The position numbers and the translations under genes were made by a program. DNA of 64,000 nucleotides from Oopsacas minuta (taxonomy: Eukaryota > Animalia > Porifera). Position 1 is the first letter of the stretch; every line of letters begins with the position of its first letter. The DNA lies in the NCBI GenBank assembly GCA_024704765.1, contig JAKMXF010000365.1, forward strand, positions 1 through 64,000, written 5' to 3'. The notes beneath the pieces were generated by a model. The model saw nothing but the letters and a program-made list of their open reading frames with translations. It was not told where the DNA came from and searched no databases. This document shows positions 43,072 through 63,866 of the stretch, piece after piece.

Positions 43072-43458
43072 ATGGGAAGGAAGTCTGATATTATTGGGTA
43101 TGTCAAGACTTTAGATGACTATAAGACTAGATTATCGCTGAGAACTTTACTGGCTTTGTTACAGAAGGAAGATGTATTTATTCGAATAGAAGCAATCGAC
43201 CTCAACATCATATTGAGGTCTGTTCCTGAGATCAGCAAGGCTCAGGCCGATAAGATTAAGAAACATAAAAGGCTTTTGAGGAAGAGGGTTGCCAAGAAAG
43301 GCTTTGAAGATCGTACGAAGGTTCGATACACAGATTTGAAACGAGGAATAGAATCTTTAACTTTGGATAAGAAAAGATTGTTGGAAGAGAAACTTGGTTT
43401 GCAAAATGAAGTTAGAGTATTTTCCAGAAATATTATCCTGGAAGGTGTCGCTAGTTAG
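43072..43458 (+). CDS. Divergent Maf-like bZIP protein 1 (128 aa, intronless)
   Basis: Maf extended-homology-like EDVFIRIEAIDLNIILR, basic region KIKKHKRLLRKRVAKKGFEDR and a leucine heptad zipper. TATATATA lies ~55 bp upstream. Confidence 0.65.
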   Translation: MGRKSDIIGYVKTLDDYKTRLSLRTLLALLQKEDVFIRIEAIDLNIILRSVPEISKAQADKIKKHKRLLRKRVAKKGFEDRTKVRYTDLKRGIESLTLDKKRLLEEKLGLQNEVRVFSRNIILEGVAS

Positions 43459-44323
43459 AGTTATACTTCCTGTTAGCGGTTAACTATCTTCCCCGCAATA
43501 TTTGTTAGTGAATTGCTGTTTATTGTTTCCTGTTGTTTATCTTTGAGCTTTTTGCAATTTCCTTTTCCAGCTGCTCTCTGTTGTAGAATTAATATTATTT
43601 TGTACAATCAACTACTTAAGATGAGACCGTTTAGAGGTGTTACTCCATCTGAAGGGCTTATTAATTGAATTAGTATCCCATGTGTTAGTAACCATCTTTC
43701 TATTACTGCCACTTTTGTTGTGACAGTTTAGCAGTTCCCTCTAATTTACAAATACACCCATAACAAATATTCATTAATTTCTATCATACAAACTTTCCTA
43801 TTTTTACTACAGTCTACCTCGACAACATTACTGGCTAGTTGGTATGCATACTAATTTGCTAGTTGAAAGAGGAACATTTCTCTCTGCGCTTACCCCCTCT
43901 CATCTTATGATGTGAGGCAATTAATCCAGAGGCACATTCCTTTATCTGAACATGGTATCTAGGTTGTGCGATTTAATGAGCTAATCAGTTAATTATATTA
44001 GTTGTAAAGTTAAAATACAATTTCATGACGTCACTTTATTTGCCTAAAATTCCTTCCATGAATAGCTGTATCCATGGTATTTGCTATATTTATAAGATCT
44101 AAACTGTAACCATAACGATGACGTCACCATTGCGGAGTGATGGTGACATATCTAATTTTAAAGAGATAGAACAGTGCCAGATCGTGAGGACGGCACCTGG
44201 TTCAGCTTTTAATATGTTTGCCAACTAACCTTCCAAATTATCAGAGTATGGTGTAATTCAAATCTACCATGGATAAGAATTCCATGATGAGGTGTATGAA
44301 TTCTATTATTTCATACACACATA

Positions 44324-44460
44324 CACTGAATGCCGGTTATAAGATCATCGTCGGGAAATGAGCTTAGTGTTCTTATATCCGGTATAATATACAAGAATAT
44401 ATGAGAACTGTTTCTGAAGATGGCTTTTGTAACCGGTGTTCTTATATCCGGCATCTACTG
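44324..44460. mobile_element. Tc1/mariner-pogo-type MITE, 137 bp, ~20-bp TIRs, TA flanks
   Basis: TA-CACTGAATGCCGGTTATAAG ... CTTATATCCGGCATCTACTG-TA (16/20 TIR match). Confidence 0.7.
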
Positions 44461-45159
44461 TATGAGCTGTTTGATAGTACAAAAATTTGTAAATTCTAAA
44501 ATACGTATTTCCATAAGGTAAGTATTATTTGTTGATTATTTGTTGATTATTTGTTGATTATTTGTTGATTATTTGTTAATTAAATAACTCAATTTGTATT
44601 TTGTTTAGTTAATAATATTTAATATAAATATTTGCATTTCATCGACAATCTGTGTTGCTATGGAATTATTAAATAATTATTTTAACACCTACTACAGTCT
44701 CAGAGCATTCATCTGTAATAATTAAGTCATTTCTATTCTCAGATTCATTTATTGGGGAAAGTTCTGATGGAATTTGACTGCTTTCTAGTTTCTATAATTA
44801 TAGTCAATTCCGGTTATATCTAAGCTCAAGGGACCGTGATGATTAGTTAGATATGGCCGATGGAATTATGTTACTTTGAAGGTTTGGGAGCATATTTGCA
44901 TACAATTTCACACTTCTATATATCCGTGTTAGATATAACGAGTTGATTGTACGAATATGTAAATGGGGTCACATTGGTCTAGTCCCCTCTTTAAGAACTC
45001 TGATTCTATTTTTAGATTAACACTTTGTTTATGTGAAAGATATTTTAAGCATTTTTAGTATATTATTGATCAGCAAAATATTGCATGCTTGGTTGCTTGG
45101 CTGGTTGCTATGCAAACATAATTAATAAGTGAAAATGTTGAATTTTTTGCTAATATTTT

Positions 45160-45690
45160 TCAAATCTTTCGATTCAATTTGATTTCAAATTCCTGAATTT
45201 CCTTAAGAAGGAAGTTCCTCTCTCTCTCTAAGCTCTCCTTCTCTTCCCTCAATAAACGTAGAGCTTCCATATCTGAGAACTCAAGGGTCCGGGTCTTGCT
45301 GTCCCATCCTCGCTTAGCCAATCGTTTCCGGAGTCTCCGTTTGTGTAGTTTCACTTCTGACACCTCTCTTTGAGAGAGGGAGACCTGTCTGAGTAGAGCA
45401 TTTAGAGATTTCGCCCCTATTATTCTGAGATCCTCCTCGTTGTTGAGAAGAGACAGTAGCTCTACGTAGGGAGAGCAGGTAGTCCCTGTGCGGGCTAGAC
45501 GGAGCTTCAGAGAGCTCAGACAGCATTTAGAGTCTGTACCTGTTTCGTATTGTGTCACACAATGTTCTGAAAATGTCAGCTGATTAGTGATGGAATGAAA
45601 TGTTAAATTTGTTTGATCTCCGTTTGAGAAGTTTGAATTAGGAAAATAACTCTGAAAGTCATTTTCTAAATTTACATAAAAGTCATCCAT
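45160..45690 (-). CDS. Divergent Maf-like bZIP protein 2a (176 aa, intronless)
   Basis: NEEDLRIIGAKSLNALLRQVSLSQREVSEVKLHKRRLRKRLAKRGWDSK plus zipper. TATAAAA on the minus strand at 45762-45768. Confidence 0.75.
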   Translation of the reverse strand: MDDFYVNLENDFQSYFPNSNFSNGDQTNLTFHSITNQLTFSEHCVTQYETGTDSKCCLSSLKLRLARTGTTCSPYVELLSLLNNEEDLRIIGAKSLNALLRQVSLSQREVSEVKLHKRRLRKRLAKRGWDSKTRTLEFSDMEALRLLREEKESLERERNFLLKEIQEFEIKLNRKI

Positions 45691-46840
45691 AATATATTAT
45701 TTGTTGTTATTATAATTATTATTATTCTAATTGTTGTTGTCTTTGTTTACATCTCTCCAGCTTTTATAGTAGAATATTTGACTGTTGATATTCGTTTTGT
45801 TAATGTGTCCGAATATATTTTCAATTCCATTTGTGCTTTCAATTTTCATTGAAGTTTATTGCTAATATACAAATATCTCTTAGATTATATTTAACAACAT
45901 TCCTACGTTACTATTTCGTATCTATGATATATGTGTGTGTGTGGACATATTTATGAGGATCATGTGCCGCTTGTAATCTGTAGTATCTTTCATTTCTAAC
46001 TTTACCATTTCTAAATAAGGATAAATATATTATTGAAAGTGAGATCGTTTCTTTCATTACTTTATTAATATACGTAGTTTTACTGGGTTATTTATATGTA
46101 CTTAACACCTATTTCAAGAATGGGGATGGTTCCATTTTAGCGGAGCAGCTGGACATGTAAACAGCTGATGTATCAATTAAGACATTTACTTGTGAATCTG
46201 TTTACTTTCAATATGAAGTGTTTGGTTTACATAATACTAACCATACAGGACGCCATGTCAAGCAAATAAACTTCTATATGAGCTATGGATTGTTTATCAC
46301 ACCAAATATTTATTTTTGCTTATTTACATATCATAATACAATCAATGATGCTATTTACTGGAAATTTGTTTGTCTATAATAATTATTGCATTCATAACAC
46401 CTGTGCATTATGGTTGCTAAGGACAATCCAGGTCGCTGATTCCTTATTTTTCTGTATCATTAACATTCATAACACGTATTTAACACTTTTATTAACACAG
46501 TTTCATCACTCTGAAGTGAAAGTAAATCTTGTATATTCATTAGTTTGTAAATCTACACTCTTATACGTAACACATGTATCCTCCTTCATGGGTGATGTAG
46601 ATATGTTCAAATTGTAAGCTATGCTTATTTAAGATATTTACAAATTAATGGTTAGTATATTGGTAGTCAGAGGTCATGAGGGAGACGTGTAGACACCTGC
46701 TTAATCCAGGAATTTTGGCCAGCACAGGGACTTTATCTGCCAGGGGCACTCCTGGGATCGCTCAGTTGTAACATAGTCTCATGGTCGACACTTTGTGTCC
46801 TTCATGGCTGCCGAATTGGTCGCAGAGGCAGCTCCAGCCT

Positions 46841-46960
46841 AGGGCGTAACTACCATTGAGACAGAGGACGCAGTTGCCTCATTTCCCTATAGTAATCGCC
46901 ATATATTGAGGCAAATATCCATCCTTGCCCCCTCGCTCTGGGATCTCTAGTTCCGCCCCA
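46841..46960. mobile_element. Possible short non-autonomous DNA element (Harbinger-like TIRs)
   Basis: AGGGCGTAACTA ... TAGTTCCGCCCC imperfect ~12-bp TIRs; no clear TSD. Confidence 0.35.
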
Positions 46961-47341
46961 GCCAGGTCTTAGAAATAGAATGAATAGTTGATAAACCAGA
47001 TTACCGAACAGACAGAAATATGTGAGATATATTAGACAGATTATTCGTGCTCGTCCATCTCCTGAGTTATAATTGTGAGAACTATGAAAGTGTTTAGATT
47101 CTTTCTGCCATTAATTTTGGAATTTTCAATTGGACAGAAGTTGTTCTTTTGTAAATGACCATTTTAGAATTGAATTTGTAGCCGAATAATTTCCAAAATT
47201 ATTTTCTCTTTCATTTTTCAAATTCATTCTATGTGTGTTGATGCCATAAATTCTGATTGGATACATAATCCAATGTCAGATATATAAGAGCGAAATTATT
47301 AGAAATTAACAACAAATACAAACAACAACAAATAATATATT

Positions 47342-47863
47342 ATGGATGACTTTTATGTAAATTTAGAAAATGACTTTCAGAGTTATTTTCCTAATTCAAA
47401 CTTCTCAAACGGAGATCAAACAAATTTAACATTTCATTCCATCACTAATCAGCTGACATTTTCAGAACATTGTGTGACACAATACGAAACAGGTACAGAC
47501 TCTAAATGCTGTCTGAGCTCTCTGAAGCTCCGTCTAGCCCGCACAGGGACTACCTGCTCTCCCTACGTAGAGCTACTGTCTCTTCTCAACAACGAGGAGG
47601 ATCTCAGAATAATAGGGGCGAAATCTCTAAATGCTCTACTCAGACAGGTCTCCCTCTCCCAAAGAGAGGTGTCAGAAGTGAAACTACACAAACGGAGACT
47701 CCGGAAACGATTGGCTAAGCGAGGATGGGACAGCAAGACCCGGACCCTTGAGTTCTCAGATATGGAAGCTCTACGTTTATTGAGGGAAGAGAAGGAGAGC
47801 TTAGAGAGAGAGAGGAAGTTCCTTCTTAAGGAAATTCAGGAATTTGAAATCAAATTGAATTAG
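47342..47863 (+). CDS. Divergent Maf-like bZIP protein 2b (173 aa), inverted near-identical copy of 45160-45690
   Basis: Same protein except one N>K change and a 3-residue shorter C-terminus. TATATAAG at 47281-47288. Confidence 0.75.
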   Translation: MDDFYVNLENDFQSYFPNSNFSNGDQTNLTFHSITNQLTFSEHCVTQYETGTDSKCCLSSLKLRLARTGTTCSPYVELLSLLNNEEDLRIIGAKSLNALLRQVSLSQREVSEVKLHKRRLRKRLAKRGWDSKTRTLEFSDMEALRLLREEKESLERERKFLLKEIQEFEIKLN

Positions 47864-50169: not shown

Positions 50170-50225
50170 CAGTAGATGCCGGTTATAAGAACATTATGTC
50201 CTGCTCTTAGAACCGGCATCCACTA
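50170..50225. mobile_element. Minimal MITE (21-bp TIRs + 14-bp spacer), same family as 44324-44460
   Basis: TA-CAGTAGATGCCGGTTATAAGA..TCTTAGAACCGGCATCCACTA-TA. Confidence 0.7.
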
Positions 50226-50280
50226 TACTATTCCAAATGTTGGTACTGTTAAAACCAGACCAACTTTACTGTCTCTTAGG

Positions 50281-51239: not shown

Positions 51240-51530
51240 TTATGAAGCTGAATTATTCTGGAATCTGCTGTAAAGGCTAATCTCAGCTAGCAGTCTATCC
51301 CTCTCTTTCATGAGTTCAGACTTCTCAATCCTAAGATTCCTTACATCCCTCTCCAACCGGTTATCCACCTCTCTGAGTTTCTGATCGTATCTTTTCTTGT
51401 ACCCTCTCTGTTTAAGTCGTCTCCTCATAGTCTTAATCCTTGTCACCTCCCCTACTGATTCTCCTACCAGTCTCCTCTCCAAATCCTCTAGACTAGCCTC
51501 AACAATGAATTTATTACTTAATTCTGACAT
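51240..51530 (-). CDS. Divergent small Maf-like bZIP protein 3 (96 aa from ATG 51530)
   Basis: EASLEDLERRLVGESVGEVTRIKTMRRRLKQRGYKKRYDQK (Maf consensus RRTLKNRGY) plus zipper. TATATAAA at 51577-51584 on the minus strand. Confidence 0.8.
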   Translation of the reverse strand: MSELSNKFIVEASLEDLERRLVGESVGEVTRIKTMRRRLKQRGYKKRYDQKLREVDNRLERDVRNLRIEKSELMKERDRLLAEISLYSRFQNNSAS

Positions 51531-52464
51531 ATTTAAAATTAACCGTGTTTTAATGTTACTTCCTAGCAACCAACAGTTTATATAGTTATGTTAGAATTGC
51601 TGAACTATTCCCAAATATTATTATTTGCCCCCAAATAAATTCCAAAATTGGCGCGTATTTGATAAAATCATTAGAACCTAAATTCTGAATTTCTACGCGA
51701 ACCTGCTTAATCAGTGAATTTCAAATTTGATTTGTTTATCGTAGAATGATTTGTTTAATATATTAACACCTTTTGTTGTTTATTCCAAATTCTTTTATGA
51801 GGTAACTTAGCGTATAAATACGAGTTACTTGCATTTCAAATGAATGAATTACGTCACACAATAATAAACAAACATATAAAGCAATAAATAGCTCAAATAT
51901 TGAATTGTTTAACAAATAAACAACAAATAAACAAATAAACAAACAAACAAACAAACACACAAACACAACAGCTGAAGAATCAATTTGCTTCTCTCTGCTT
52001 AATATAAAGAAAAATCATAATTATTCAATTATTATTTGTTTTATTAAATATTTCCCAACGCTTACCTAGCAACGATAAAATATTCAAAATTTCCCTTCAA
52101 ATGATTTGATATTTTATTTCTGTATTTATACCTCTGATAATAATTATACAATATTCATGTTAGTAATTATTCACACCTTGCGCCACTTGTGACCACAAAG
52201 GACACAATTTGCCTCTAGCATGTCTTATGGTATTGTGACACTTTCCTTGGTGATATTAATGATGAATTGGAATGTATTCTGTTTTCTAGAAGTATTTATT
52301 TAGGAAAATATGACTTTTGACATATTCGAATAAGGGTGTTACAATATATACCTTATTTGATATATATGAGTTTACTGTCTGTATGACTTCTGGGGTCAGC
52401 TGTTCTCAACCTAATAAGGTGTTAACATATGTCTATATTCATTAGCTAATAGCTAGAATATAGA

Positions 52465-55400
52465 ATGGCAGAAGGTCTCTACAGACTAGGAGACTATGTA
52501 TACATGGAGAGTACGGCTCCTCCGCAACCCTATCAGATATGTAGAGTGGAAGAACTCAAGAAGAACACGAAGGGGTCTGTTGAAGTTTATGTAAAGTGCT
52601 TCTTCAGACGTAAGGACCTCCCCCAATCCCTGGTCCAACTAGCTGACAGACACGCTAATCAGCTGGAGGAGGATCATATATGTGAATTGCAGGAAGAGAG
52701 GGAGAGATTGAGGACTAGTAATCCATTGGCTGCTGAACAAGGTTAGTTCCAATTGTAACTAAGGGGTTGACACATATTTCATTAATTTGTTATTCTACTT
52801 ATAGCTAATAATTGGATACTACATATAATTAATAATTAACACCTTCTGTTACCATATATGGTCATTGTTGTATAGTTATATTAGAATTGTTGACTTATCT
52901 GTAACTAATAAACAACTTTAGGTATTTAATTGTGTGTTCTATTAATAGCTATACTTAGTTCCAGTTTCATATTGTGTTACGTAGCACAATGGATATCCAT
53001 CTTAGTTCTTATAAAAGCATTCAGAATATGTATATACCACTGAATACGGACATTATACCTATACAGACACACAGACACACAGACAGATACACAGACATAC
53101 AGACACACAGACAGATACACAGACATACAGACACACAGACACACAGACAGATACACAGACATACAGACACACAGACACACAGACAGATACACAGACATAC
53201 AGACAGACAGATACACAGACATACAGACACACAGACACACAGACAGATACACAGACATACAGACACACAGACACACAGACACACAGACAGATACACAGAC
53301 ATACACATACACAGATACACAGACAGATACACGGACATACAGACATACAGACACACAGACAGATACACAGACATACAGACATACAGACACACAGACAGAT
53401 ACACAGACATACACATACACAGATACACAGACAGATACACGGACAAGTACAAAAACTAACTCACAAACAACAAACAAATAAGCTAACAAACAAACTGATC
53501 TTTGATCATCTAGTTAACAACATATGAATAATTCAACATTTCTACTTTATTGAGTTTACTCACACAACAATAACAACACGCTAAGCGCTGCAAACAAGTA
53601 TTATAGTAAATACAAACAAACAAATAACAACAACAACAACAACAACAGGAAGCTAATGCATTAGATTATACATGTACTATGTACTATGTGTGAGTAAACA
53701 GGAGGGGACCATGGATATTCTATCAATTGTTACTGAGCTCATTACAGAAGTTATCAAGATCTGTTTGTGTGAATCTATCACCTTTACTGCAATCTCTTCC
53801 CATCACGTAACACATCTCACAGAGATTTCTTTGATGTCTGCCATTATCTGCCACTTCACACCTTCTACCCGGAACAAGTCTTGTTGGGAGAACAGCTGAT
53901 GAACATCTACTGCATTTTTGTTTTTTGTTTTGGTAGGAATTAGCGCTATTCCATTTTCTGCCACATGGACAACAAAAGTAACCAGTCATCTTATGGTCCC
54001 CTGGGTCCAGGTCTATATCAAGAGATATCAGAATGGGAGTGCATATGTCTCCTTCACAGTTCCTTATAGTCTCCATCTCAGTCCTACTTCCAAATATTTC
54101 GTAGCATATTGTTTTGCAGATTGGACAGGTGTTTGACTCCTCAAACCATTTGCTAATACAGCAGTAGCAAAATGAATGAATGCATGCTAGAATTCCAATC
54201 CTCCCATTTGGTTTCTCCTGACAGATGGCGCAAAGATCTGTGTCAATATTTTCGCGGGTAGGACTGCATTCAATAAACCCGGTGTCAGCACAATTGTGGC
54301 ATAAATTGTCCTTGTTGGTGGCTGAAGTGGCGTGACAATATTCACATGTTTGATGTGTCGCCATCAGTTTGTAAATGTTTAAGAATGTGTGCATGAGTTT
54401 CCCACTTTTCTATTTATGAGATTTTCCTTTGTGATTTTGTTCTATTTGTGTTTTTATGAATAATATTTCTGACATAATCTGTTCTAATTATAGACTGTTT
54501 ATTTGGGATTTGCTTTATAATATTTACTAAATACACCGCAGACAACTTTATTGGGGAAACTATTTTTAGCGAAAATTATGTTGAATTTTCCAAAAATTCA
54601 AAAAGTAATTTACCCTCTAATTTGGAACTAATTATAGTGTTAGTTCCAATATAGAATATTATCCCTCGGCGGGAGATTAAGTCTCAATCTTGGATGTGTT
54701 TTCCCATAACTTGTTAACACCACAAACAAACAAACAAATATACATGTATATTACTCGTCAATAATATTGAAATAATTGTTTGCAATAGTAAATTTATGGA
54801 ATATTAGCAAGGTATTACTTACACCATTAGGGGTCTACTTATCACCCTATCTCCCTCTCCTATAGATACAGAGAGTCTTGAGGGTATATGGTCCGGTATA
54901 ACCGAGGTGGCGCGTCACCAGCTGAAGCACAGAGAGCTATTCCTGTCCAGACAGATAGAAACATTTCGTATCGATGCTGTGAGGGGTAAATGCACTGTAA
55001 CGGTACTTAATGAATTAGAAAGTCTATTGTCTTATCTGAAAGATGAAGACAAATTCTATTATTCTATGGTTTATGATCCTAACCAGAAAACACTTATGGT
55101 TGATAAAGGTCTGTATGATTAATCATATTTTCACACCTTTGGTCAATTCCACCTTGCGTATAATTCGAATTTGAATCTTACAAATGTCTGACACGATTAT
55201 TTGCAAACAATTTGAATGTTGTTATTATTATTATTTTGATTTACAGGAGAGATGCGTATCGGTTTCAGATACCAAGCAGAGATCCCTCCTCTCCTCACAG
55301 ACCCTCTAACAGAGGATCACAGAGAGGTGTTAGATCTAGAAACACCTGTCTGGGTCCCCTCCAAGATCCCAGACGAAGACATCGAAAAGTTTCTAATAAT

Positions 55401-57022
55401 AGCACGATCTGTTGGTACATTTGCTCGGGCTCTTGTAGATGATAGTAACAATATTAACCGTATGCCTCTACGTCTGGGGGCAGCTACTGCCTCCAGAGAC
55501 ATAACTCTATTCCATGCTCTTGACACCTTACATGCTGCTAATTACGATCTAGCTGCTGGCATATCTGGATTTGTTATTAATGGTAGACCTATTGTATGTT
55601 GTGATGAGTTGGAGGCTTGGACAGCTGAGGAGGCTAATTTGTTCCAACAAGGTGAGTTATATTTGTATCAATGGGACCATATCTACCCCATGTGACTATA
55701 TTATATAACACCTTCCTTGTAAAAGGCGTCTCCAATGGAAGGATTTTTTCAATTCCCGTTATATCTAAGCTGGAGGGATCGTGATAATTTCGACATTACT
55801 TTGACCATATATGTACAATTTTCACACTTCAATATAAGCCGGTATTTCAAGGTAACCGTGTTAGATATAACGGGACTTGACTGTAATTCTTTGAGTCCTT
55901 ATGGTATCCATGGTTACAGGTCTGCTAGAACAGAAAGATTTCCTTTACATTCAACGGAAATTCTTTCCAAAGAAATCTCTCAAATCTGTAATTTCCTATT
56001 ATTATTTATGGAAAACTACACAACAATACCAAATACAGAGGAAGCTTAAACTACAAGATAAACAGAACGATTTGAAAGAGGTCATTGTACATCTGATCCG
56101 ATCAGCTGGTCCCTCTCAAAACCCCACGAATTTATTAGGTCTAGCGCCACCAAGTGGAGAGCTACCACAAACTGTGCCACATGACACCTTGATTAAGGCG
56201 GCAGATGGTGGTAAATCCTGTGAGAGCTGTTATGCTACCACTAGTAATAAATGGCATATCTGGGGAGACCCTACTCGTGGGTGTCGGATATGTAACCACT
56301 GTATGATCTACTGGCGTAAATATGGGGGCCTGAAGCTACCCACTATATGGGAGCATCACGAGAAACATCCCGAACAGGTATACACGTGTAATCAGTGTAA
56401 AAAACAATTTAATAGACAGGAGAGGTTAACAAACCATTTAAGGCAACACCAACCACATAGATGTCACATGCCTAATTGTGAGAAAACATTCAAAAGTAAA
56501 TCGACACTACGTCGACACATTTCAGGACAACATCAGAACCAGCCTGGCTCCAGCATGCAACAGTTAATGCCTCCTACCAGCTTTCTAATGAATGCTACTT
56601 CATTGTCATTATTTGTACGTAAACAAGTAGCACGTGTTGATATAATACGCTTAGCTAGACACCCATTCCGTTCCTACCCGAAGGAGCCCTTCGATATTCC
56701 AGAGGACTCAGAGTTCAAGCTACGAGCCCGCCGCCTGGGTCTTAAGTATACCAATTCCCGTGCGATAGCTGATGTGGTCGATCAGCTGATTGAGTCACAG
56801 CTCCACCCGACTAGTCCCATAATACGCACCCTCTTAAAAGGTACCCTACTCTCCCCAAAGTCTATCCCACTCATGTCTGACCATTTGTCCCCTCAAATCC
56901 TCCTGTCCTCTTCTAGTTCCAAGAGACTCAGACCTCAGTCAAATGACACTCCGGCGCCTAAACAAATATGTTCAGAAGATAGTCCGACCAATCAGATTGT
57001 ACCCTCACACTTCGCTAATTAG
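52465..57022 (+). CDS. MTA1: Metastasis-associated protein (MTA1/2/3 family; BAH-ELM2-SANT-GATA, plus two C2H2 fingers), multi-exon
   Basis: [37 protein letters not shown]; ELM2 [24 protein letters not shown]; [24 protein letters not shown]; [23 protein letters not shown]; R1-like RLARHPF. Symbol given at family level. Confidence 0.92.
53061..53445. repeat. Complex (ACAG/ACAC/ATAC) microsatellite in MTA intron 1
   Basis: Direct inspection. It explains the four low-complexity ORFs at 52974-53489. Confidence 0.95.
53723..54364 (-). CDS. Intronless RING-HC (C3HC4) + ZCCHC24-type zf-3CxxC protein nested antisense in MTA intron 1
   Basis: [32 protein letters not shown]; then [36 protein letters not shown], resembling the ZCCHC24 C-terminal domain. 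Likely start MATHQ at 54364 (upstream in-frame ATG at 54394). Confidence 0.8.
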   Translation of the reverse strand: MATHQTCEYCHATSATNKDNLCHNCADTGFIECSPTRENIDTDLCAICQEKPNGRIGILACIHSFCYCCISKWFEESNTCPICKTICYEIFGSRTEMETIRNCEGDICTPILISLDIDLDPGDHKMTGYFCCPCGRKWNSANSYQNKKQKCSRCSSAVLPTRLVPGRRCEVADNGRHQRNLCEMCYVMGRDCSKGDRFTQTDLDNFCNELSNN

Positions 57023-57190
57023 GCTAATTAGTGTATTGACTTAGTAGATGTATTCTGCATTCCAATTCTCCCTTACTGTCACTAGGTTAAGTAAGGGTAT
57101 AATTATGCTTTAATTGTTTAATAATTATTTTAATTACTTCCGGTAGAAATTTCAAATTTCTTAGGATCTATTATTTTGCAAATTTATTGA

Positions 57191-57292
<102 letters not shown>

Positions 57293-58012
57293 AAGTTTAT
57301 AATTTATTACAATACTTATTTATTTAACAATTCCATAAATAGAAATATTTCAGAATGCATTTGGTTGTTAAGGTATCGCCAGTAACTAAGGATGCACCGT
57401 ATGAGGACTAGACACCCCAGGAGATCACCATCTAATAGGTGTCACAATAATGTGGCACGAGAAGAGCCACTTTAAAATATAGCGACACAATTATCAGAAG
57501 AAGGAAACAAAGTTTTGGAATCAGCAATATACACAATATTCCCACTTGAGAACTACCTAGCAACCAGCAGTACACTTTGGAATTCATATATCCTGTCAAT
57601 TTGTCGAATAATATACAAATACGTGAAATAACCCTAATTACGTGTATGATTAATCTTCACACCTTTCAAGACAATATTAATATACAATCACCTTTTTATT
57701 TCGGTCTTAAGGTCTCATGGTTTCTCTTGACAGCACCCTCGTATATATATTTATTTTAATTAATTAACACTTCAACATGTAAAGCTATTTACTATATTTC
57801 AAAGTGAAACTAAAACATAGCTTCTAAATCATGTATTCTGCCTACGTAGCAATAGTTATGAAGTTTAATATGAAAATAAAGAATAGAAATTTAATATTTG
57901 GAATTACTAATTTCAAATTGAAACAAATAATTAATTTTTGAATTCTATCTTTTCTCAGAAATGAGATTACATTTTGCCTAATTTTATAATTTGTTAAAAT
58001 TCGTATTACCAA

Positions 58013-58688
58013 GCTTACGCTGTATCTTACGCCGTATCTTAAGCCGTATCTTACGCTGTATCTTAAGCCGTATCTTACGCCGTATCTTAAGCCGTATCTT
58101 ACGCCGTATCTTAAGCCGTATCTTACGCTGTATCTTAAGCCGTATCTTACGCCGTATCTTAAGCCGTATCTTACGCCGTATCTTAAGCCGTATCTTACGC
58201 TGTATCTTACGCTGTATCTTACGCTGTATCTTAAGCCGTATCTTACGCTGTATCTTACGCTGTATCTTACGCTGTATCTTAAGCCGTATCTTACGCTGTA
58301 TCTTACGCTGTATCTTAAGCCGTATCTTAAGCCGTATCTTACGCTGTATCTTACGCTGTATCTTAAGCCGTATCTTAAGCCGTATCTTACGCTGTATCTT
58401 AAGCCGTATCTTACGCTGTATCTTACGCTGTATCTTAAGCCGTATCTTACGCTGTAGCTTACGCTGTAGCTTACGCTGTATCTTAAGCCGTATCTTACGC
58501 TGTAGCTTACGCTGTAGCTTACGCTGTATCTTAAGCCGTAGCTTACGCTGTAGCTTACGCTGTAGCTTACGCCGTATCTTACGCTGTATCTTACGCTGTA
58601 GCTTACGCTGTATCTTAAGCCGTATCTTACGCTGTAGCTTACGCCGTATCTTACGCTGTATCTTATGCTGTAGCTTACGCTGTATCTT
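58013..58688. repeat. 12-bp tandem satellite (GTATCTTACGCT / GTATCTTAAGCC / GTAGCTTACGCT variants), ~56 units
   Basis: 12-bp period. It explains ORFs 57984-58697 and 57991-58728. Confidence 0.95.
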
Positions 58689-59508
58689 TCGAATCAAGCA
58701 GACATCAATTCATTATTTTATTAATTAAACTACAAATTTTGCTAATATTTTTCTAAGAATTTACTAAAAACAAATAATCATAAATACATACATATATTGT
58801 GTAATATCGCATAATAATTATTAATAACTGTTATCACCTTACATTTATTATATAGCACTGGAATTGGGTCATTGCTATTACAGAAATATGCTGATAATAA
58901 TCTTGTATTCACAGATAAAAAATACAAATTCCTTACTGTCTTTTTTACAAGAATTTACTACTGAGATATTTGTATATTACTGGTGATTGGTTTTTATAAT
59001 CTAGATTAATCTCACCAGGTTAATTAGAGGTGTTAGTTTCAATATGTACATATATTAATTATTAATGTATTTGGGGAGTATACATTAGGTATCCAGCAGA
59101 TTATCCTACCCAATCAGATTTAAGAGTATATCCGCAGCTGTTATTCTATTTGTGCATTCGTATGCCTATCTGAGACTGTAATATCATTGGTCTAATGGAC
59201 TCCATTGGAAAGGTCCTTGCATAGAATATGTGTCCTCCTTATATGTGGTCCAATTGGCATGAAATTGGTCACATGGGTGTATATACATGTACCTTTTCAC
59301 ACCTCTGGATATAATAATATATTCACTAATATAACTTCTTAGCAATCGGTCTGTAACCTGTATTTTAATTGCAAAATTATGCGAAATAAACTATACTAGA
59401 AATTTCTGTAAATTCAGCTCGCTATTAACCGCTATTAGCTGCTGTTATCCGCTATTAGCCGCTATTATCTGCTATTAGCCGCTTAGAATATATTACATCA
59501 ATTATTTA

Positions 59509-59919
59509 TCAAACTTGCTGGAGAGAATCTTTATAGAACTTTAATTCAGCTTGTAGCTGTCGTTTCATTTTCACTAGTTCCTCTTTCTCCTCGTTAAGAT
59601 CCGCTAGCCTCTGTTCCAGATCCTGGAATGCTCTTCTCCCTCTTTTATCGTACTTCTGTTTAAAATGTGATTTCTGTAATCTACGTCTCTGTATCCTTAA
59701 CAGCTCTACCTCCTCGCTAGTAGCAGTAGTCCTGTTTAATAATTCATAGAATTCTGTTAATTTTAGACTACGGATAGCTTCTTCTTGTAAGTAAGGGAAG
59801 GAGGGTAGCAGAATATTATTGTTCTGATTTGTATCTACACTCCTGGGGAGGTATATATCTAGACCTCTTAAATCTGAGAACTCTAATAACTCGTCTGTTA
59901 TTTCTATTTCTCTTTGCAT
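59509..59919 (-). CDS. Divergent Maf-like bZIP protein 4 (136 aa, intronless)
   Basis: EEAIRSLKLTEFYELLNRTTATSEEVELLRIQRRRLQKSHFKQKYDKR plus zipper. TATATAAA ~35-40 bp upstream; a 10-bp GCTATTA.CC tandem repeat lies just 3' (59421-59483). Confidence 0.75.
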   Translation of the reverse strand: MQREIEITDELLEFSDLRGLDIYLPRSVDTNQNNNILLPSFPYLQEEAIRSLKLTEFYELLNRTTATSEEVELLRIQRRRLQKSHFKQKYDKRGRRAFQDLEQRLADLNEEKEELVKMKRQLQAELKFYKDSLQQV

Positions 59920-60657
59920 CTTTGTTGTTGTTTGTTTGTTTGTTGATCCTTATTTATATAAATCACTTTGAAAGTGTATTAATTGCCAGGACACTTTTGG
60001 ATTTTATTTCATTATTTTATATTTTTCATCTCTAAGATAATTAGCAATATATTTTGCATACCAATCACAGTGTTACGTTGCCATATACGATTAGACCTTT
60101 CAGCATAAATCTATTTCTGGGACAGGTTAGGTGTAAAATATTAATAATACATTTTCAATATTTGGATAGACAAGTAAATATAATTGTTAACTGCCTTGCA
60201 ACTTACCTAGAGACTAGTTGTATAGATTGGAATTTGTACTATCATTTGTCTTACAAATGTATACATTATAAAGCTTATTATTGACAGAGATGGAGCTGTT
60301 GACAGCTATCGTTATATGTTTATTTCTGTAAATATATATGTAAATAGAATTGGCTGTCAATACCAACAAATGAATGTAATTAGTTCTATTTACAGCTGAT
60401 TATTTGCTGATTTGTTGCTATTAATAGAATTTGATTATCCTGATCACTCAGATATTTATCGGTGTTGTTATTATTATTTATTTATTTATTTATCTCTTAT
60501 ACCTTGTAAGGTGTGAGCGCCAAATTCCTGGGATAATCTAATTAATGATACAGGAATTCTGTCTCAAATACGATTATTCACATTCTTCCACTTTGGTTTA
60601 TCCCAGGAATACCTCTGTGTATTAGATGTTTGTTAGTAGCAATTAGGGTATTAAGGA

Positions 60658-62154
60658 ATGTTTGGCTTAATCACAGATATAATTACGTGAGTTAACACCT
60701 ATTATTCCACCTTATATAACACTTTACACCTATTATTCCACCTTAAATAACACTTTACACATATTTATTCTAGGTTATTTTGCTGTAATCTCTATCCAGT
60801 GTTTGCTTCATTCAAAGCTATAAGGAATAGAGATGGTGATGAATACGTATGTTTATATATTTTCACACCTTCTATCAACATATTACTGTTGTTTATTTGT
60901 AGTCTAGATGGTTCATATATTGGATAATGTTCTCTCTGTTCCTGTCCGTTACTTGGGTCACAGATTGGATATTTTGGTGGTTAGTTAAATACCATAGACC
61001 CAATCTTGTTGTTAGGGATAAATACTATTCATTTGTTGTTGATTTCTCTTAGGATTCCATTCTATGGCATGTTAAAATTGGGTATATCTATTTGGATGTT
61101 ACCTTTCTTTAGAGTTAGTTACATATTTATACCTTAGCAACGATACTGCATTCAGGAATTTTATATCTTGACTTTAGGGTTCTAAAATTCTATACACAGG
61201 ATTAGTACATCCTCAACTGATGGAAAATGAAGTGGTTAGTATTAACAAACAAATAAACAAACAACAAACAAACAAACAAACTACCAAGCAAATATGATAT
61301 ATACATATTTATTTGTTGTTATTTACTAGCAAATCGATATGTTTGTCAACTCAATTAGCAACAGATTACTCACATTAGGAAAAGTTCTATTTTCATTTGC
61401 TTTACAGAAAACTACAGAAGTAAGTATATCACGTTTAGGTACATATTATTACACCTTTATCTTGTGTATATATAGGCATATGCTACTCAAACATTTGCAG
61501 CTGTTGCTCCTATCCCTCCCCAACAACCAGCTGCACCTCAAGGAATGAAGTACCCTCTTCAAACAACTGAATCTTCTCCACCTACATATTCTGATGTAAT
61601 TGGTTCAGATCCAGGTCGACAGAAGGAATTCAGTGATGATGAGGACATGGCCAAACATCTTTCTAGTAGGCTGACTTATTTTATTTTGGGCGCCATAACA
61701 TTAATCACTTAGATGGCGCCTATTTTTCATTATGCTTCACAGCAATATGTGCCGGCTATAAGAACCTCCTTGGGAGTATTAATACATATACTTTACCGAT
61801 ATTTACTGTATTAATATTTATAGTAACATTAGCACGTGTGTCACCAGAACCAACGGACACTACTGCCACTTCAGAGCCACATATGCGTGAGCCACACAGG
61901 CAAACAGAACGGCCAAAGAGTGAGGCGATAACTCAATCACAGAGGTCCCATTTATCCAGACAGAAGTCTCCTCAATTTAAGACCGGGAGAGCTCAAAGTG
62001 AAGCAAGTATAGATCTCACCTCTGAGAAGAAAAGGTCCTCTAGACAATTGAGACAACAGACACAAGAATCTACGGTTAGTTCCTGTTAATATTTGAGGTG
62101 ATAGGTATTTATTTATTCTATTTATAGCGACAGAGTAAGGTACAAGAGAAATAA
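60658..62154 (+). CDS. REEP1-4-type ER-shaping protein (TB2/DP1/HVA22 family), ~8 exons
   Basis: Hand-spliced: MFGLITDIITLFCCNLYPVFASFKAIRNRDGDEYSRWFIYWIMFSLFLSVTWVTDWIFWWIPFYGMLKLGISIWMLPFFRGSKILYTGLVHPQLMENEVQIDMFV..., then a polar tail. The 3' exon structure after ~61666 is less certain. Confidence 0.85.
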
Positions 62155-62702
62155 CAGCTGTGAATAAACAATCAGATTCTGTAGATTTATTGTTTATTGT
62201 TTTGTTGTTGTTAAGCATTTTTATGATCACAAATATTTTAAATCATTACATACACACACACACATGAAGTCTTTGATTGTAATTATTGTTTGTTTGTTTA
62301 TATGTTGTTATTGTTAAGATGTATACATTTCGAAATTAATGTATATTTGTTTGATATCCTAAAGGTGTGAAAATCTCACGTAGACATAAACAACAAATCA
62401 TACTCGCTAGCTGCTGTAGTATAGATAGCTATTAATATTCACCCATATCAAGTTTTAAAATATTTGTAATATATTGATGGGTAGCTTGTATTATCACAGC
62501 CCCACCGGTTATTCAATCAATTCGTTCGTTAAAACGATAATTTTTTGCTTGGCTTCCTGTTAGGAGGCTTTATAACTACCAGAGGTGTATTGGAATTTGT
62601 AATAACGGACACTTATTGTGTGGCTAAACGACTTGCTTTCTTCTTATATCTGGCAAAAAATCAGTTGAGTAGAATATAATAGATTCGGTTAATGAGCTAG
62701 AG

Positions 62703-63046
62703 TTCTTATACTCGGCATGCTCTTATAACCGGTGTTCGTATACCCGGCATGCTCTTATACCCGGCATGCTCTTATAACCGGTGTTCTTATACCCGGCATG
62801 CTCTTATAACCGGTGTTCGTATACCCGGCATGCTCTTATAACCGGTGTTCGTATACTCGGCATGCTCTTATAACCGGTGTTCGTATACTCGGCATGCTCT
62901 TATAACCGGTGTTCTTATACCCGGCATGCTCTTATAACCGGTGTTCTTATACTCGGCATGCTCTTATAACCGGTGTTCTTATACTCGGCATGCTCTTATA
63001 ACCGGTGTTCTTATACTCGGCATGCTCTTATAACAGGCATCTAGTG
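62703..63046. repeat. 32-bp (2x16) tandem array derived from the MITE TIR, ending in a TIR + TA
   Basis: (TTATAACCGGTGTTCTTATACTCGGCATGCTC)n ending ...CTTATAACAGGCATCTAGTG-TA. Confidence 0.85.
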
Positions 63047-63457
63047 TATGACTATCTGCTTGGTTCTGTTTCTGGACAAATGTCCCGATTAATCAGACCA
63101 TCACCATTTTAACATAATATTTATAATAGCTGTTTCCCTAACACAAAACACTATAATAATTACATTTGCATATTATTAATCATATATTTGATAGAAATGA
63201 GCACAAGTACTATCTCCTTACGGATTACTTTCAGGTGCAGGTGTACAGAATAAGACTTTCGTATCCGTTTAATTGCCGTATCAGTCCTACCCATATTTCT
63301 AACTAAATATAGTAGTATTTTCCAAACACAATCTTTTGAGCTAATTTGCTACAGCAAATTAATAATATTTTACCAGCAACACCTCCTTCATATTGTTGAC
63401 ACATTTTGTATACTTTTATATCAACAAATTTATATAAATACGATTAATTATTTTGAA

Positions 63458-63799
63458 ATGGTGTCAGAGTCCTCAATGGCTGAAAATTATTCAAATATTG
63501 TGCCAAATTCCAAATATCCATTTTATTCAGAGGAACAAATTCATGATCTCCCATTCAAGGATCTCATAGCTGGACTCAGGTCCCTAGCAACCGTGGAAGA
63601 GATCGGAATGATTAAAAATATTCGTAAAATCAACAAAAAGAAATTATGGAAAAGAAACAGAGACAAAAATGAGAAATTCGAGGTTATAGATTTGGAGGCA
63701 ATTTTGGAAATTCTTAGAATTGAGAAAAATACTCTAATTTGTTTCCGAACTTGTTTATTAAAAGAGATAAGTGAACTCCAATCCCTAATTAATAGTTAG
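63458..63799 (+). CDS. Divergent Maf-like bZIP protein 5 (113 aa, intronless)
   Basis: FYSEEQIHDLPFKDLIAGLRSLATVEEIGMIKNIRKINKKKLWKRNRDK (cf. Maf FSDEQLVTMSVRELN..LR..KEE) plus zipper. TATATAAA at 63431-63438. Confidence 0.7.
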   Translation: MVSESSMAENYSNIVPNSKYPFYSEEQIHDLPFKDLIAGLRSLATVEEIGMIKNIRKINKKKLWKRNRDKNEKFEVIDLEAILEILRIEKNTLICFRTCLLKEISELQSLINS

Positions 63800-63800
63800 T

Positions 63801-63866
<66 letters not shown>
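63800..63866. repeat. (GTT)n microsatellite immediately after the bZIP stop
   Basis: About 21 units. Confidence 0.95.

What the first reader, a model, noticed from the sequence alone, without database searches (positions are those of the whole stretch)
43072..63799. Cluster of six intronless Maf-like bZIP genes sharing a rewired DNA-contact code (N-x7-R to K/Q-x7-D/E)
Seen: aligned to Maf RRTLK-N-RGYAASC-R, the basic regions read KRLLR-K-RVAKKGF-E (43072), KRRLR-K-RLAKRGW-D (45160 and 47342), RRRLK-Q-RGYKKRY-D (51240), RRRLQ-K-SHFKQKY-D (59509) and RKINK-K-KLWKRNR-D (63458). All six lose the invariant Asn. All replace the invariant Arg with an acidic residue. Five put an aromatic at the Cys position, and all have Lys where Maf has the first Ala. 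The proteins are otherwise highly divergent, keep the Maf extended-homology helices and a zipper, and each has a TATA-like box ~20-75 bp upstream of the ATG. Known: the Asn and Arg make the base-specific contacts of bZIP proteins. Inference: a lineage-specific expanded family under selection for a new signature. They could recognise a non-MARE sequence, or act as non-binding dominant-negative dimer partners (as CHOP or Id do).
Basis: partly seen in the sequence, partly recalled or inferred. Interest (0 to 1): 0.8.

Follow-up and report, generated by a model that had tools for sequence, protein, structure and literature searches.

The report
Glass-sponge mini CNC/Maf bZIPs, rewired basic region
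Six small single-exon genes in a glass-sponge genome encode cut-down relatives of the Nrf2/Maf gene switches in which the two "invariant" DNA-reading residues (Asn and Arg) are replaced by Lys/Gln and Asp/Glu. Other glass-sponge assemblies keep this altered stretch more strictly than any other part of the protein, so it is a working, undescribed variant and not decay.

Summary
The register (Asn column = K/Q, Arg column = D/E) holds in ungapped alignments to MafB, Nrf2 and BACH1. It also holds by the canonical spacing to the zipper leucines.

- **Not decaying copies.** Syntenic orthologues with the same signature sit around the same MTA gene in at least three other unnamed ENA assemblies. Synonymous sites are saturated (pS 0.74-0.86) while pN is 0.26-0.38. 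In every orthogroup the rewired basic region is the best-conserved segment (47-87% identity).
"Maf-like" is too narrow. Only 2 of 6 pass Pfam bZIP_Maf, two orthogroups match Nrf2/BACH1 best, and all six carry a CNC-type zipper (Lys, then Lys/Arg, at core 'a' positions). Two of the six are a 99% identical inverted pair. A seventh member lies on contig C111.
- **Wider context.** The cluster is one branch of a radiation of more than 100 mini CNC/Maf genes in this 61-Mb genome (apparently Oopsacas minuta). Only 31 of 103 keep N..R.
- **Best reading (inferred).** They are obligate heterodimer partners of Maf-type zippers that still bind DNA with changed specificity. A dominant-negative role is not excluded.

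I could not test expression. The scan has already noted two other mini CNC/Maf clusters elsewhere in this genome. I found no paper describing any of this.

The parts
43072..43458 (+). Gene 1, 128 aa, K..E class (HKRLLRKRVAKKGFE). Accessory helices, basic helix and CNC-type zipper.
   Evidence: ORF. Six orthologues at 50-67% identity with HKRLLRKR invariant. Group profile against canonical Maf: prob 91%, E 1.1e-6.
43014..43020 (+). TATA-like box of gene 1, 58 nt before the ATG
45160..45690 (-). Gene 2, 176 aa, K..D class (KRRLRKRLAKRGWD). It has an N-terminal extension of about 85 aa with no known domain.
   Evidence: ORF. Orthologue at L088:17527-18054(-) and P0024/P0026 keep KRRLRKRLAKRxWD.
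45762..45768 (-). TATA box of gene 2, 78 nt before the ATG
47342..47863 (+). Gene 3, 173 aa. Head-to-head inverted duplicate of gene 2 (172/173 aligned residues identical).
47281..47287 (+). TATA box of gene 3, 61 nt before the ATG. The promoter sequence is unrelated to that of gene 2.
45172..45711 (.). Left arm of a 540-nt, 99% inverted repeat (right arm 47321-47860). It covers little more than the two coding sequences.
   Evidence: A like head-to-head pair, 94% alike, exists in the other assembly.
51240..51530 (-). Gene 4, 96 aa from the first ATG, Q..D class (RRRLKQRGYKKRYD). It is the most Maf-like basic region of the six.
   Evidence: Pfam bZIP_Maf 33.4 bits. Ungapped MafB alignment. AF2 pLDDT 96.3 and MafA/MafB fold match at TM 0.79-0.90. 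Orthologues at L087:17882-18193, P0016, P0021 and P0027.
51578..51584 (-). TATA box of gene 4, 54 nt before the ATG at 51530. This makes the upstream TTG start at 51569 unlikely.
59509..59919 (-). Gene 5, 136 aa, K..D class (RRRLQKSHFKQKYD). It has a CNC-type accessory motif (FPYL...) and a disordered N-terminus.
   Evidence: Pfam bZIP_Maf 24.8 bits. Orthogroup profile best hit is Nrf2, E 1.6e-6, ungapped. P0001-P0006 and P0015 keep the basic region unchanged. AF2 helices 46-51, 54-63 and 68-135.
59952..59960 (-). TATA box of gene 5 (TATATAAAT), 39-41 nt before the ATG. It is conserved in the orthologue.
63458..63799 (+). Gene 6, 113 aa, K..D class (RKINKKKLWKRNRD). The real start is possibly the second ATG at 63476, where the orthologues begin (MAEN/MAQK).
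Evidence: ORF. Orthogroup profile best hits are BACH1 at 6.6e-7 and Nrf2 at 2.2e-5. Orthologues at L087:3804-4148(-) and L087:3180-3524(+).
63431..63439 (+). TATA box of gene 6 (TATATAAAT), 25-27 nt before the first ATG

Best explanation
The six genes are intact members of a conserved, glass-sponge-restricted subfamily of miniature CNC/Maf-superfamily bZIP proteins (96-176 aa).

Shown here:
- Each keeps the accessory helices ahead of the basic region, a strongly basic helix and a leucine zipper in canonical register.
- At the two positions that define bZIP base reading they carry Lys/Gln in place of Asn and Asp/Glu in place of Arg. They also have Lys at the first Ala position and usually an aromatic at the Cys position.
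- Each paralogue's version of this stretch is held nearly fixed across assemblies.

Inferred:
- All six have Lys and then Lys/Arg at two successive core 'a' positions of the zipper, the pattern of Nrf2/BACH-type CNC proteins. They should therefore homodimerise poorly.
- They should instead pair with proteins whose zipper has aliphatic residues there. In this genome those are the four canonical Mafs on contig C88 and the large M..R and S..R classes.
- In such heterodimers the rewired basic helix still lies on DNA but reads a half-site different from the MARE/CsMBE half-site. This would give the radiation of mini-bZIPs an enlarged combinatorial repertoire of target sites.
For: Real genes under constraint:
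- The ORFs are intact here and in syntenic orthologues around the same MTA gene with its nested RING gene, in ENA assemblies ERZ25072730 and ERZ25071281. A further related cluster lies on one contig of ERZ20067936.
- pS is 0.74-0.86 (saturated) against pN 0.26-0.38.
- TATA boxes are found in 11 of 11 genes and orthologues, against 8% by chance per gene.

The basic region is a working surface:
- It is the most conserved segment in all five orthogroups: 71-87% (47% in the loosest group), against 32-74% for the accessory helices and 30-56% for the zipper.
- Its net charge over 22 residues is +9/+10, against +8/+9 in this genome's canonical Mafs.
- Gene 4 keeps the equivalents of MafG Arg56, Arg57, Lys60, Arg62, Gly63 and Tyr64, which are phosphate and flank-reading contacts according to PMC9756947.
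- Experimental Asn-to-Gln and Asn-to-Ser changes in Zta retain binding with altered half-site preference (PMC8756438).

Fold: AF2 pLDDT 96.3. The top structural matches are MafA/MafB/MafG on DNA, at TM 0.79-0.90 and rmsd 1.3-1.5 A.

Zipper type:
- The 'a' positions at +14/+21/+28 are aliphatic-K-K/R in all six.
- Among library proteins, 44 with CNC-type basic regions show that pattern (IKR, VKR, VKK and so on). The 44 with Maf-type basic regions show mostly K/R-V-N.
- This genome's canonical Mafs have K-I-V.

Pairing test: gene 4 protein with the canonical Maf bZIP domain of L001 gave ipSAE 0.45 against a best control of 0.18. The tool's verdict was 'weak support'. Its mark was reached by 51 of 78 solved complexes and 2 of 108 mismatched pairs, and it warns that passes at 0.60 or under are more often wrong than right unless the pairing was already likely. 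The runs agree in at least 94% of their contacts and the partner's pLDDT is at least 81.
Against: - There is no expression evidence. The only runs found hold over 90% of a 5.5-kb stretch including intergenic DNA, so they are DNA runs. The window's proteins are not on record elsewhere.
- No DNA-binding or dimerisation measurement exists.
- An acidic residue where the invariant Arg meets the centre of the site could simply prevent binding.
- The complex prediction is weak and cannot tell which family member is the partner.
- A zipper argument from 'a' positions gives a tendency, not a rule.
- With the nine contact columns removed, the tree neither resolves nor rejects a single origin of the acidic class (7 changes on the free tree, but the constrained tree is 5.95 lnL better; p-AU 0.57).
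Confidence: 0.5

Rival explanations
1. Natural dominant-negative (poison) partners. The proteins heterodimerise with Maf-type or CNC-type factors through the zipper. The Asp/Glu at the Arg position, near the fork over the centre of the site, then blocks or weakens DNA binding of the dimer, much as CHOP or Id titrate their partners.
For: Both base-reading invariants are lost in all members. The CNC-type zipper points to heterodimers. An earlier scan note describes another pair in this genome with an acidified basic region, read the same way (untested here).
Against: The basic stretch keeps full positive charge (+9/+10) and is the most conserved part of each orthogroup. The accessory helices, whose known role is to position the basic region on DNA (PMC9756947), are retained. 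A pure titrating partner would not need either feature. Even CHOP-type inhibition can coexist with binding to alternative sites, so this rival overlaps with the best explanation.
Confidence: 0.25
2. Homodimeric, or within-cluster heterodimeric, DNA-binding factors that recognise a new palindromic or pseudo-palindromic site without any canonical Maf partner.
For: The genes are clustered and could be co-regulated. The zipper has four to five regular Leu heptads. The basic region is conserved.
Against: Lys at a(+21) and Lys/Arg at a(+28) in all six would face each other in any dimer formed within the class. That is the arrangement found in CNC proteins, which rely on small Maf partners (PMC9756947).
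Confidence: 0.12
3. The conserved basic helix serves another ligand. It could bind RNA or an acidic protein surface, or act as a nuclear or nucleolar targeting signal, with the zipper acting as a scaffold. In that case the proteins are not transcription factors at all.
For: Both canonical base readers are gone. Very basic helices bind many polyanions. The oomycete bZIP study raised the same possibility for its novel classes (PMC4046829).
Against: The whole Maf/CNC DNA-binding architecture is kept, including the spacing from the accessory helices to the basic region and from there to the zipper.
Confidence: 0.08
4. Decaying retrocopies or chance ORFs with no function.
For: The ORFs are single-exon and short, four of six fail the Pfam threshold, and no RNA evidence was available.
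Against: The ORFs remain open in several assemblies after synonymous saturation, with pN well below pS. Synteny is conserved. Conservation is region-specific. TATA boxes are present in 11 of 11 genes and orthologues.
Confidence: 0.02

Closest known systems
CNC bZIP proteins (Nrf2/NFE2L2, NF-E2 p45, BACH1)
   Same: The accessory CNC-type motif, basic region and zipper align without gaps for the 59509 and 63458 orthogroups (Nrf2 at 1.6e-6 and 2.2e-5; BACH1 at 4.5e-4 and 6.6e-7). The zipper core pattern aliphatic-K-K/R at a(+14/+21/+28) is found in all six. This predicts dependence on a Maf-type partner.
   Different: There is no N-x2-AA-x2-CR: K/Q replaces Asn, K replaces the first Ala, an aromatic replaces Cys and D/E replaces Arg. 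The proteins are 96-176 aa and have none of the long regulatory regions of CNC proteins. Gene 4 lacks the extra N-terminal CNC helix and matches Maf better.
Maf proteins (MafA/MafB/c-Maf; small MafG/K/F)
   Same: Pfam family PF03131. Gene 4 aligns without gaps to MafB and keeps R-R-x-L-K-x-R-G-Y. Its model superposes on MafA/MafB/MafG bound to MARE at TM 0.79-0.90. The size is like that of small Mafs.
   Different: The Asn that hydrogen-bonds the flanking cytosine in MafG (Asn61; PMC9756947) is Gln or Lys, and the invariant Arg is Asp or Glu. The zipper is not Maf-type (Maf: K/R-V-N or K-I-V at the same 'a' positions).
Oomycete 'novel class' bZIPs (C-R, V-R, R-R, N-K classes; PMC4046829)
   Same: Both are lineage-specific expansions by duplication of bZIP genes in which the conserved Asn of the basic region is replaced. 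Both are conserved and presumably functional, and both are classed by the residues at the same two positions.
   Different: They are unrelated bZIP lineages. In oomycetes the second position stays basic (R or K), whereas here it is acidic. Here the domain is the CNC/Maf type with accessory helices.
CHOP/DDIT3 and designed A-ZIP dominant negatives
   Same: These are bZIP-family proteins with a non-canonical basic region that act through heterodimers.
   Different: CHOP's basic region is disrupted by Pro/Gly and A-ZIPs carry a net-acidic extension (both statements are from my own knowledge). The sponge proteins keep an uninterrupted helix prediction and a net charge of +9/+10.
Other mini CNC/Maf clusters noted by this scan in the same genome (s1-221489, s1-221520)
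   Same: Same genome and same superfamily. All are small intact genes with altered basic regions that are conserved in other glass-sponge assemblies (not re-tested here).
   Different: Those notes describe a deleted heptad and an acidified basic stretch. Here the basic region is full-length and fully basic, with a specific K/Q..D/E substitution pattern.

Membership tests
Pfam PF03131 bZIP_Maf (CNC + Maf superfamily) | Profile score at or above the gathering cut-off (22 bits) | tested here: inconclusive
   This is met by 2 of 6 (51240: 33.4 bits; 59509: 24.8 bits) and not by the other four as single sequences. Their orthogroup profiles do reach family members. The 63458 group hits BACH1 at 6.6e-7. 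The 45160/43072 group reaches this genome's canonical Mafs by hhalign at prob 91%, E 1.1e-6.
Pfam PF03131 bZIP_Maf (CNC + Maf superfamily) | Accessory helices (EHR or CNC motif) directly N-terminal to a long basic-zipper helix | tested here: met
   The AF2 model of gene 4 has H6-11, H14-20 and H26-95 at pLDDT 96.3, and matches MafA/MafB at TM 0.79-0.90. Gene 5 has H46-51, H54-63 and H68-135, and matches Nrf2/MafG/MafA chains.
bZIP superfamily | Basic-region invariants N-x7-R | tested here: not met
   The pairs are K..E, K..D, K..D, Q..D, K..D and K..D. The register was checked.
bZIP superfamily | Leucine heptads in phase with the basic region (first zipper Leu 10 residues after the Arg column, then every 7) | tested here: met
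   d positions +17, +24 and +31 are Leu in all six. Position +10 is Leu in 4 of 6, and +38 is Tyr/Phe/Leu.
Maf proper (large and small Maf) | N-R-G-Y-A-x-x-C-R basic motif | tested here: not met
   Only gene 4 keeps R-G-Y. None keeps N, A, C or R.
Maf proper (large and small Maf) | Maf-type zipper core (K/R at a+14, aliphatic at a+21, V/N at a+28) | tested here: not met
   All six have aliphatic-K-K/R. The 44 library proteins with a Maf-type basic region are mostly KVN or RVN, and this genome's canonical Mafs are KIV.
CNC family (Nrf/NF-E2/BACH) | CNC motif upstream of the basic region, aligning to Nrf2/BACH1 | tested here: inconclusive
   This is met for the 59509 and 63458 orthogroups, with ungapped or nearly ungapped alignments including the FPY/PF stretch. 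It is not shown for the 45160/43072 group (BACH1 E 0.15). It is absent from the 96-aa gene 4, which matches Maf better.
CNC family (Nrf/NF-E2/BACH) | N-[KR]-x-A-A-x-x-C-R basic motif | tested here: not met
CNC family (Nrf/NF-E2/BACH) | Zipper with Lys/Arg at a+21 and a+28 (the heterodimer-only type) | tested here: met
   All six show it. The pattern is that of the 44 library proteins with CNC-type basic regions.
Dominant-negative HLH/bZIP inhibitors (Id, A-ZIP type) | Basic region absent or net acidic | tested here: not met
   Net charge is +9/+10 over the 22-residue basic segment, the same as canonical Maf.
Dominant-negative HLH/bZIP inhibitors (Id, A-ZIP type) | Heterodimers fail to bind the partner's DNA site | not testable with these tools
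   This needs EMSA or PBM with purified heterodimers.

The most novel reading that the evidence does not exclude
The K/Q..D/E pattern is a new bZIP recognition code in which the conserved acidic residue itself reads bases, as the basic-region Glu of bHLH proteins reads the E-box. It would be used in heterodimers with Maf-type partners. On this reading, the 100-plus mini CNC/Maf genes of glass sponges, with a dozen or more different residue pairs at the two 'invariant' positions, form a large combinatorial network. That network would have replaced or supplemented other regulators in these syncytial animals with compact, gene-poor genomes.
Probability: 0.3. Interest if true: 0.75.

Novelty: new variant of a known kind. 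Interest (0 to 1): 0.62.

Why it matters
The N-x7-R pair is the textbook constant of bZIP DNA recognition. Here a whole clade has swapped both residues, the Arg for an acidic residue, and then held the new version fixed. It gives a natural test of how far the bZIP scaffold can be re-coded.

It also belongs to a radiation of more than 100 CNC/Maf-type genes in a 61-Mb sponge genome. Only 31 of the 103 bZIP ORFs whose two columns could be read keep N..R, and that count includes a few ordinary non-Maf bZIPs. This runs against the published view that non-vertebrate animals have one or two CNC genes and that sponges have under twenty bZIPs (PMC6213907, PMC4736632). Neither glass-sponge genome paper mentions it (PMC10280926 has no occurrence of bZIP or Maf; PMC10282587 names one bZIP of unknown function).

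The proteins are small and single-exon, so binding and dimerisation assays would be easy to run.

Tried and rejected
- **Expression.** The look-up of sequencing runs (rna) on window:47300-52800 found only four runs of one study, each holding 0.90-0.96 of the words across genes and spacers alike. They are therefore DNA runs, so I did not use read laying.
- **Exact-sequence look-ups.** Look-ups of the window's own proteins found no record.
- **Complex prediction.** Gene 4 protein with canonical Maf (L001 residues 205-317) gave 'weak support', 0.45 against a best control of 0.18. I do not take this as evidence for that particular partner.
- **Alternative register.** hhalign gave another register for the 45160/43072 group (KRGW under NRRY, restoring an Arg). 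It needs a 4-residue and a 3-residue gap and breaks the phase with the zipper, so I rejected it. It cannot be excluded without a structure.
- **Single origin of the acidic class.** A quick ML tree gives one clade at SH-aLRT 86 when the contact columns are included. Without them the free tree needs 7 changes, but the constrained tree is better by 5.95 lnL (p-AU 0.57). The question is unresolved.
- **PDB search for the 45160 group.** It gave only marginal hits (BACH1 0.15, MafG 0.18), and a spurious repeat-protein hit on the N-terminal extension.
- **Literature.** Seven full-text searches found no description of glass-sponge CNC/Maf expansions or of a K..D class.

Full report
**What is there.** Between them lies an MTA-type gene (BAH, ELM2, GATA and C2H2 exons at 52465-57022) with a RING gene nested antisense in its first intron. 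The assembly has 61.46 Mb in 365 contigs, and the window is the start of contig C365. These figures match the published Oopsacas minuta genome (365 scaffolds, about 61 Mb, 36% G+C; PMC10280926). An earlier scan note had already called the organism a glass sponge.

**Checking the observation.**
- The quoted basic-region strings are correct.
- Pfam bZIP_Maf passes its cut-off for only two of the six: the 51240 gene at 33.4 bits and the 59509 gene at 24.8 bits, against a cut-off of 22.
- The 51240 protein aligns without a gap to MafB, with Gln under the invariant Asn and Asp under the invariant Arg.
- After I collected orthologues, the 59509 orthogroup profile aligned without a gap over 87 residues to Nrf2 (E 1.6e-6).
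- The 63458 orthogroup profile aligned to BACH1 (6.6e-7) and Nrf2 (2.2e-5). In both orthogroups Lys falls under Asn and Asp under Arg.
- Independently of sequence similarity, the zipper leucines fall 17, 24 and 31 residues after the D/E in all six, which is the canonical bZIP phase.
- For the 45160/47342/43072 group, the link to Maf rests on profile-profile comparison with this genome's canonical Mafs (prob 91%, E 1.1e-6). That alignment chose a shifted, twice-gapped register.
- An AlphaFold2 model of the 51240 protein (pLDDT 96.3) has two short helices and one 70-residue helix. It superposes on MafA, MafB and MafG bound to DNA at TM 0.79-0.90 and rmsd 1.3-1.5 A. The 59509 model has the same layout after a disordered N-terminus.
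- A TATAWAW box lies 25-78 nt upstream of the ATG in all six genes and in all five orthologues examined. The chance rate is 8% per 77-nt stretch of this window.
- The box positions suggest that the 51240 gene starts at the ATG at 51530, and that the 63458 gene may start at its second ATG.

**They are not decaying copies.**
- Word-index searches found homologues of the 59509 and 43072 proteins at 50-67% identity, all from unnamed ENA assemblies.
- One such contig (ERZ25072730) carries the same neighbourhood: the MTA gene with its nested RING gene, flanked by orthologues of the 59509, 51240, 63458 (two copies) and 45160 genes. Each orthologue has the same K/Q..D signature.
- A second assembly (ERZ25071281) shows the same arrangement.
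- A third (ERZ20067936) carries several members on one contig.
- Between the window and the first assembly, synonymous differences are saturated (pS 0.74-0.86) while non-synonymous differences are 0.26-0.38.
- Within each of the five orthogroups the 20-residue basic segment is the most conserved part: 87, 83, 71, 86 and 47% mean pairwise identity. The accessory helices score 32-74% and the zipper 30-56%.
- So the rewired stretch is what selection holds most tightly, and each paralogue has its own fixed version.

**How far the class extends.**
- A Pfam bZIP_Maf scan of the whole assembly gave 92 matches, about 80 of them over the cut-off. Nearly all lie in open frames of 80-370 codons.
- A profile of the window's genes added more matches.
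- An iterated HMM over all these ORFs gave 106 distinct proteins, and in 103 of them both columns could be read.

| Residues at the Asn and Arg columns | Proteins |
|---|---|
| N..R | 31 |
| M..R | 20 |
| S..R | 9 |
| K..D | 5 |
| V..R | 4 |
| A..R | 3 |
| K..R | 3 |
| Q..D | 1 |
| K..E | 1 |
| other pairs | 26 |

- Only seven carry an acidic residue at the Arg column: the six in the window and one on C111:257862-258182, a paralogue of the 59509 gene.
- The genome also has four tandem canonical Mafs (K-N-R-x-Y-A-x-x-C-R) on contig C88.
- An exhaustive HMMER search of 1.84 billion representative proteins with the class profile found 334 proteins at E <= 0.001 and 17 at E <= 1e-10.
Those I traced come from the same kind of ENA assemblies. 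The rest are ordinary N..R Maf and CNC proteins.
- A quick ML tree places the acidic class, with four neighbours (K..V, D..S, R..K, S..K), in one clade (SH-aLRT 86) with 1:1 orthologue pairs.
- Without the nine contact columns, the 68 remaining columns neither resolve nor reject monophyly (p-AU 0.57).
- Six of the seven genes lie within 21 kb, which fits tandem origin.

**Maf or CNC?** 'Maf-like' is too narrow.
- All six have an aliphatic residue at a(+14), Lys at a(+21) and Lys/Arg at a(+28) of the zipper.
- Among the library proteins, the 44 with a CNC-type basic region (N-[KR]-x-A-A-x-x-C-R) show exactly this pattern. The 44 with a Maf-type basic region show mostly K/R-V-N.
- This genome's canonical Mafs have K-I-V, and the M..R class has R/K followed by an aromatic or aliphatic residue and then V.
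- The 59509 and 63458 groups match Nrf2/BACH1 much better than Maf, including the motif upstream of the accessory helices.
- The 51240 gene matches Maf better and keeps R-G-Y.
- The cluster is therefore best filed under the CNC/Maf superfamily, with CNC-type zippers.

**Mechanism.**

Shown:
- The architecture of a Maf/CNC DNA-binding domain is intact.
- The basic helix is as positively charged as in canonical Mafs (+9/+10 against +8/+9 over 22 residues).
- The basic helix is the most constrained part of the protein.

From published structures:
- MafG Asn61 hydrogen-bonds the flanking cytosine, with Tyr64 beside it.
- Arg57 reads the next guanine.
- Arg56, Lys60 and Arg62 hold phosphates.
- MafG mainly reads the outer bases and not the TRE core.
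- CNC proteins bind as heterodimers with small Mafs (all from PMC9756947).
- The 51240 protein keeps every one of these positions except Asn61, which is Gln.
- In Zta, Asn-to-Gln and Asn-to-Ser changes keep binding but shift half-site preference (PMC8756438).

Inferred:
- The proteins still lie on DNA.
- They do so as heterodimers, because two facing Lys/Arg pairs in the core disfavour dimers within the class.
- They read something other than a MARE or CsMBE half-site.

The role of the acidic residue is open. It could read a base (as the Glu of bHLH basic regions does; from my own knowledge), pair with the partner's Arg across the fork, or repel the central phosphates.

A complex prediction of the 51240 protein with a canonical Maf domain reached the tool's mark only weakly: 0.45 against a best control of 0.18. 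That mark was reached by 51 of 78 solved complexes and 2 of 108 mismatched pairs, but passes at 0.60 or under are flagged as more often wrong than right. The runs agree in at least 94% of contacts and the partner's pLDDT is at least 81. It cannot tell which family member binds.

The main rival is a dominant-negative role. The retained charge, the retained accessory helices and the strict conservation argue against a pure titrating partner, but nothing excludes it.

**Comparison with what is known.**
- The nearest precedent for whole classes of bZIPs with a replaced Asn is in oomycetes (C-R, V-R, R-R and N-K classes; PMC4046829). There the second position stays basic and the domain is not the Maf/CNC type.
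- Surveys of animal bZIPs report 446 bZIPs across 18 metazoan and 2 unicellular holozoan genomes and a stable complement in sponges (PMC4736632).
- Another survey reports one or two CNC-type genes per non-vertebrate species, with 17 bZIPs in Amphimedon (PMC6213907).
- The Oopsacas genome paper does not mention bZIP or Maf.
- The Aphrocallistes paper mentions a single bZIP of unknown function upregulated in the growing osculum.
- I found no description of the K/Q..D/E class or of the radiation.
- This scan has noted two other mini CNC/Maf clusters elsewhere in this genome, one with a deleted heptad and one with an acidified basic stretch. I did not re-test them. They agree with the picture of a large, diversifying family.

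**Limits.**
- No RNA data could be brought to bear.
- The other assemblies are unnamed, so 'glass-sponge-restricted' rests on synteny, similarity and the absence of the class among the other library hits.
- dN/dS cannot be given as a number because dS is saturated.
- All functional statements are inference.

**Verdict.** It is a new variant of a known kind, of moderate to high interest.

Noticed in passing
G000 genome-wide (e.g. L005-L086; C55, C297, C309, C310, C341, C354, C362): There are more than 100 small single-exon CNC/Maf-type bZIP ORFs in a 61-Mb genome. Only 31 of 103 keep N..R. Large classes have Met (20) or Ser (9) at the Asn position, and many sit in local tandem or inverted clusters.
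   Followed up: partly
G000:C88:838965-846304 (L001-L004): Four tandem canonical Maf genes (257-336 aa open frames, K-N-R-x-Y-A-x-x-C-R, Pfam 57-66 bits). They are the likeliest conventional partners for the mini-bZIPs.
   Followed up: partly
window 45172-45711 and 47321-47860; L088:17527-18054 and L088:20102-20312: The head-to-head gene pair is 99% identical over little more than the coding sequence, while the two promoters are unrelated. The other assembly has the same head-to-head pair, 94% alike, although the species differ by about 44% in protein. This looks like concerted evolution by gene conversion between inverted copies.
   Followed up: partly
G000:C111:257862-258182 (L089:995-1318, minus strand): A seventh K..D gene lies outside the cluster. 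It is a paralogue of the 59509 gene (RRNLQKSHFKQKKD). Its neighbour in the tree, L078 (C111:106456-106743), has K..V.
   Followed up: partly
window 52465-57022 with 53723-54394 (minus); L087:12219-16814 with 14673-15431; L104:14968-18174: The MTA-type gene with a RING/3CxxC gene nested antisense in its first intron is conserved in arrangement in two other assemblies.
   Followed up: partly
window 58014-58688, 53063-53445, 62753-63034, 57192-57292, 63802-63866: Long simple arrays lie between the genes: a 24/36-nt unit x 19-28 copies, (ACAGACAC)n, a 32-nt unit x 8.8 copies, and (AAC)n with its complement (TTG)n. The orthologous spacers in the other assembly hold different, much longer arrays (L088:12529-16493).
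   Followed up: no
window 45436-45690 (N-terminal 85 aa of the 45160/47342 proteins): The N-terminal extension has no Pfam match but carries a conserved stretch (C-x-D/S-S-L-K-x-R-L-A-x-x-G-T-x-C-S-P-Y) shared with the orthologue in L088. Its function is unknown.
   Followed up: no
library proteins P0056, P0098, P0099, P0137, P0153: A separate set of Maf-like proteins from unknown organisms has N..S (RRRRLKNRxSARxCSNKKRE), that is, Ser at the invariant Arg column. It is unrelated to the sponge class.
   Followed up: no
window 41906-42175 (minus): An exon encoding a molybdopterin-binding (MoCF_biosynth) domain lies just upstream of the cluster.
   Followed up: no
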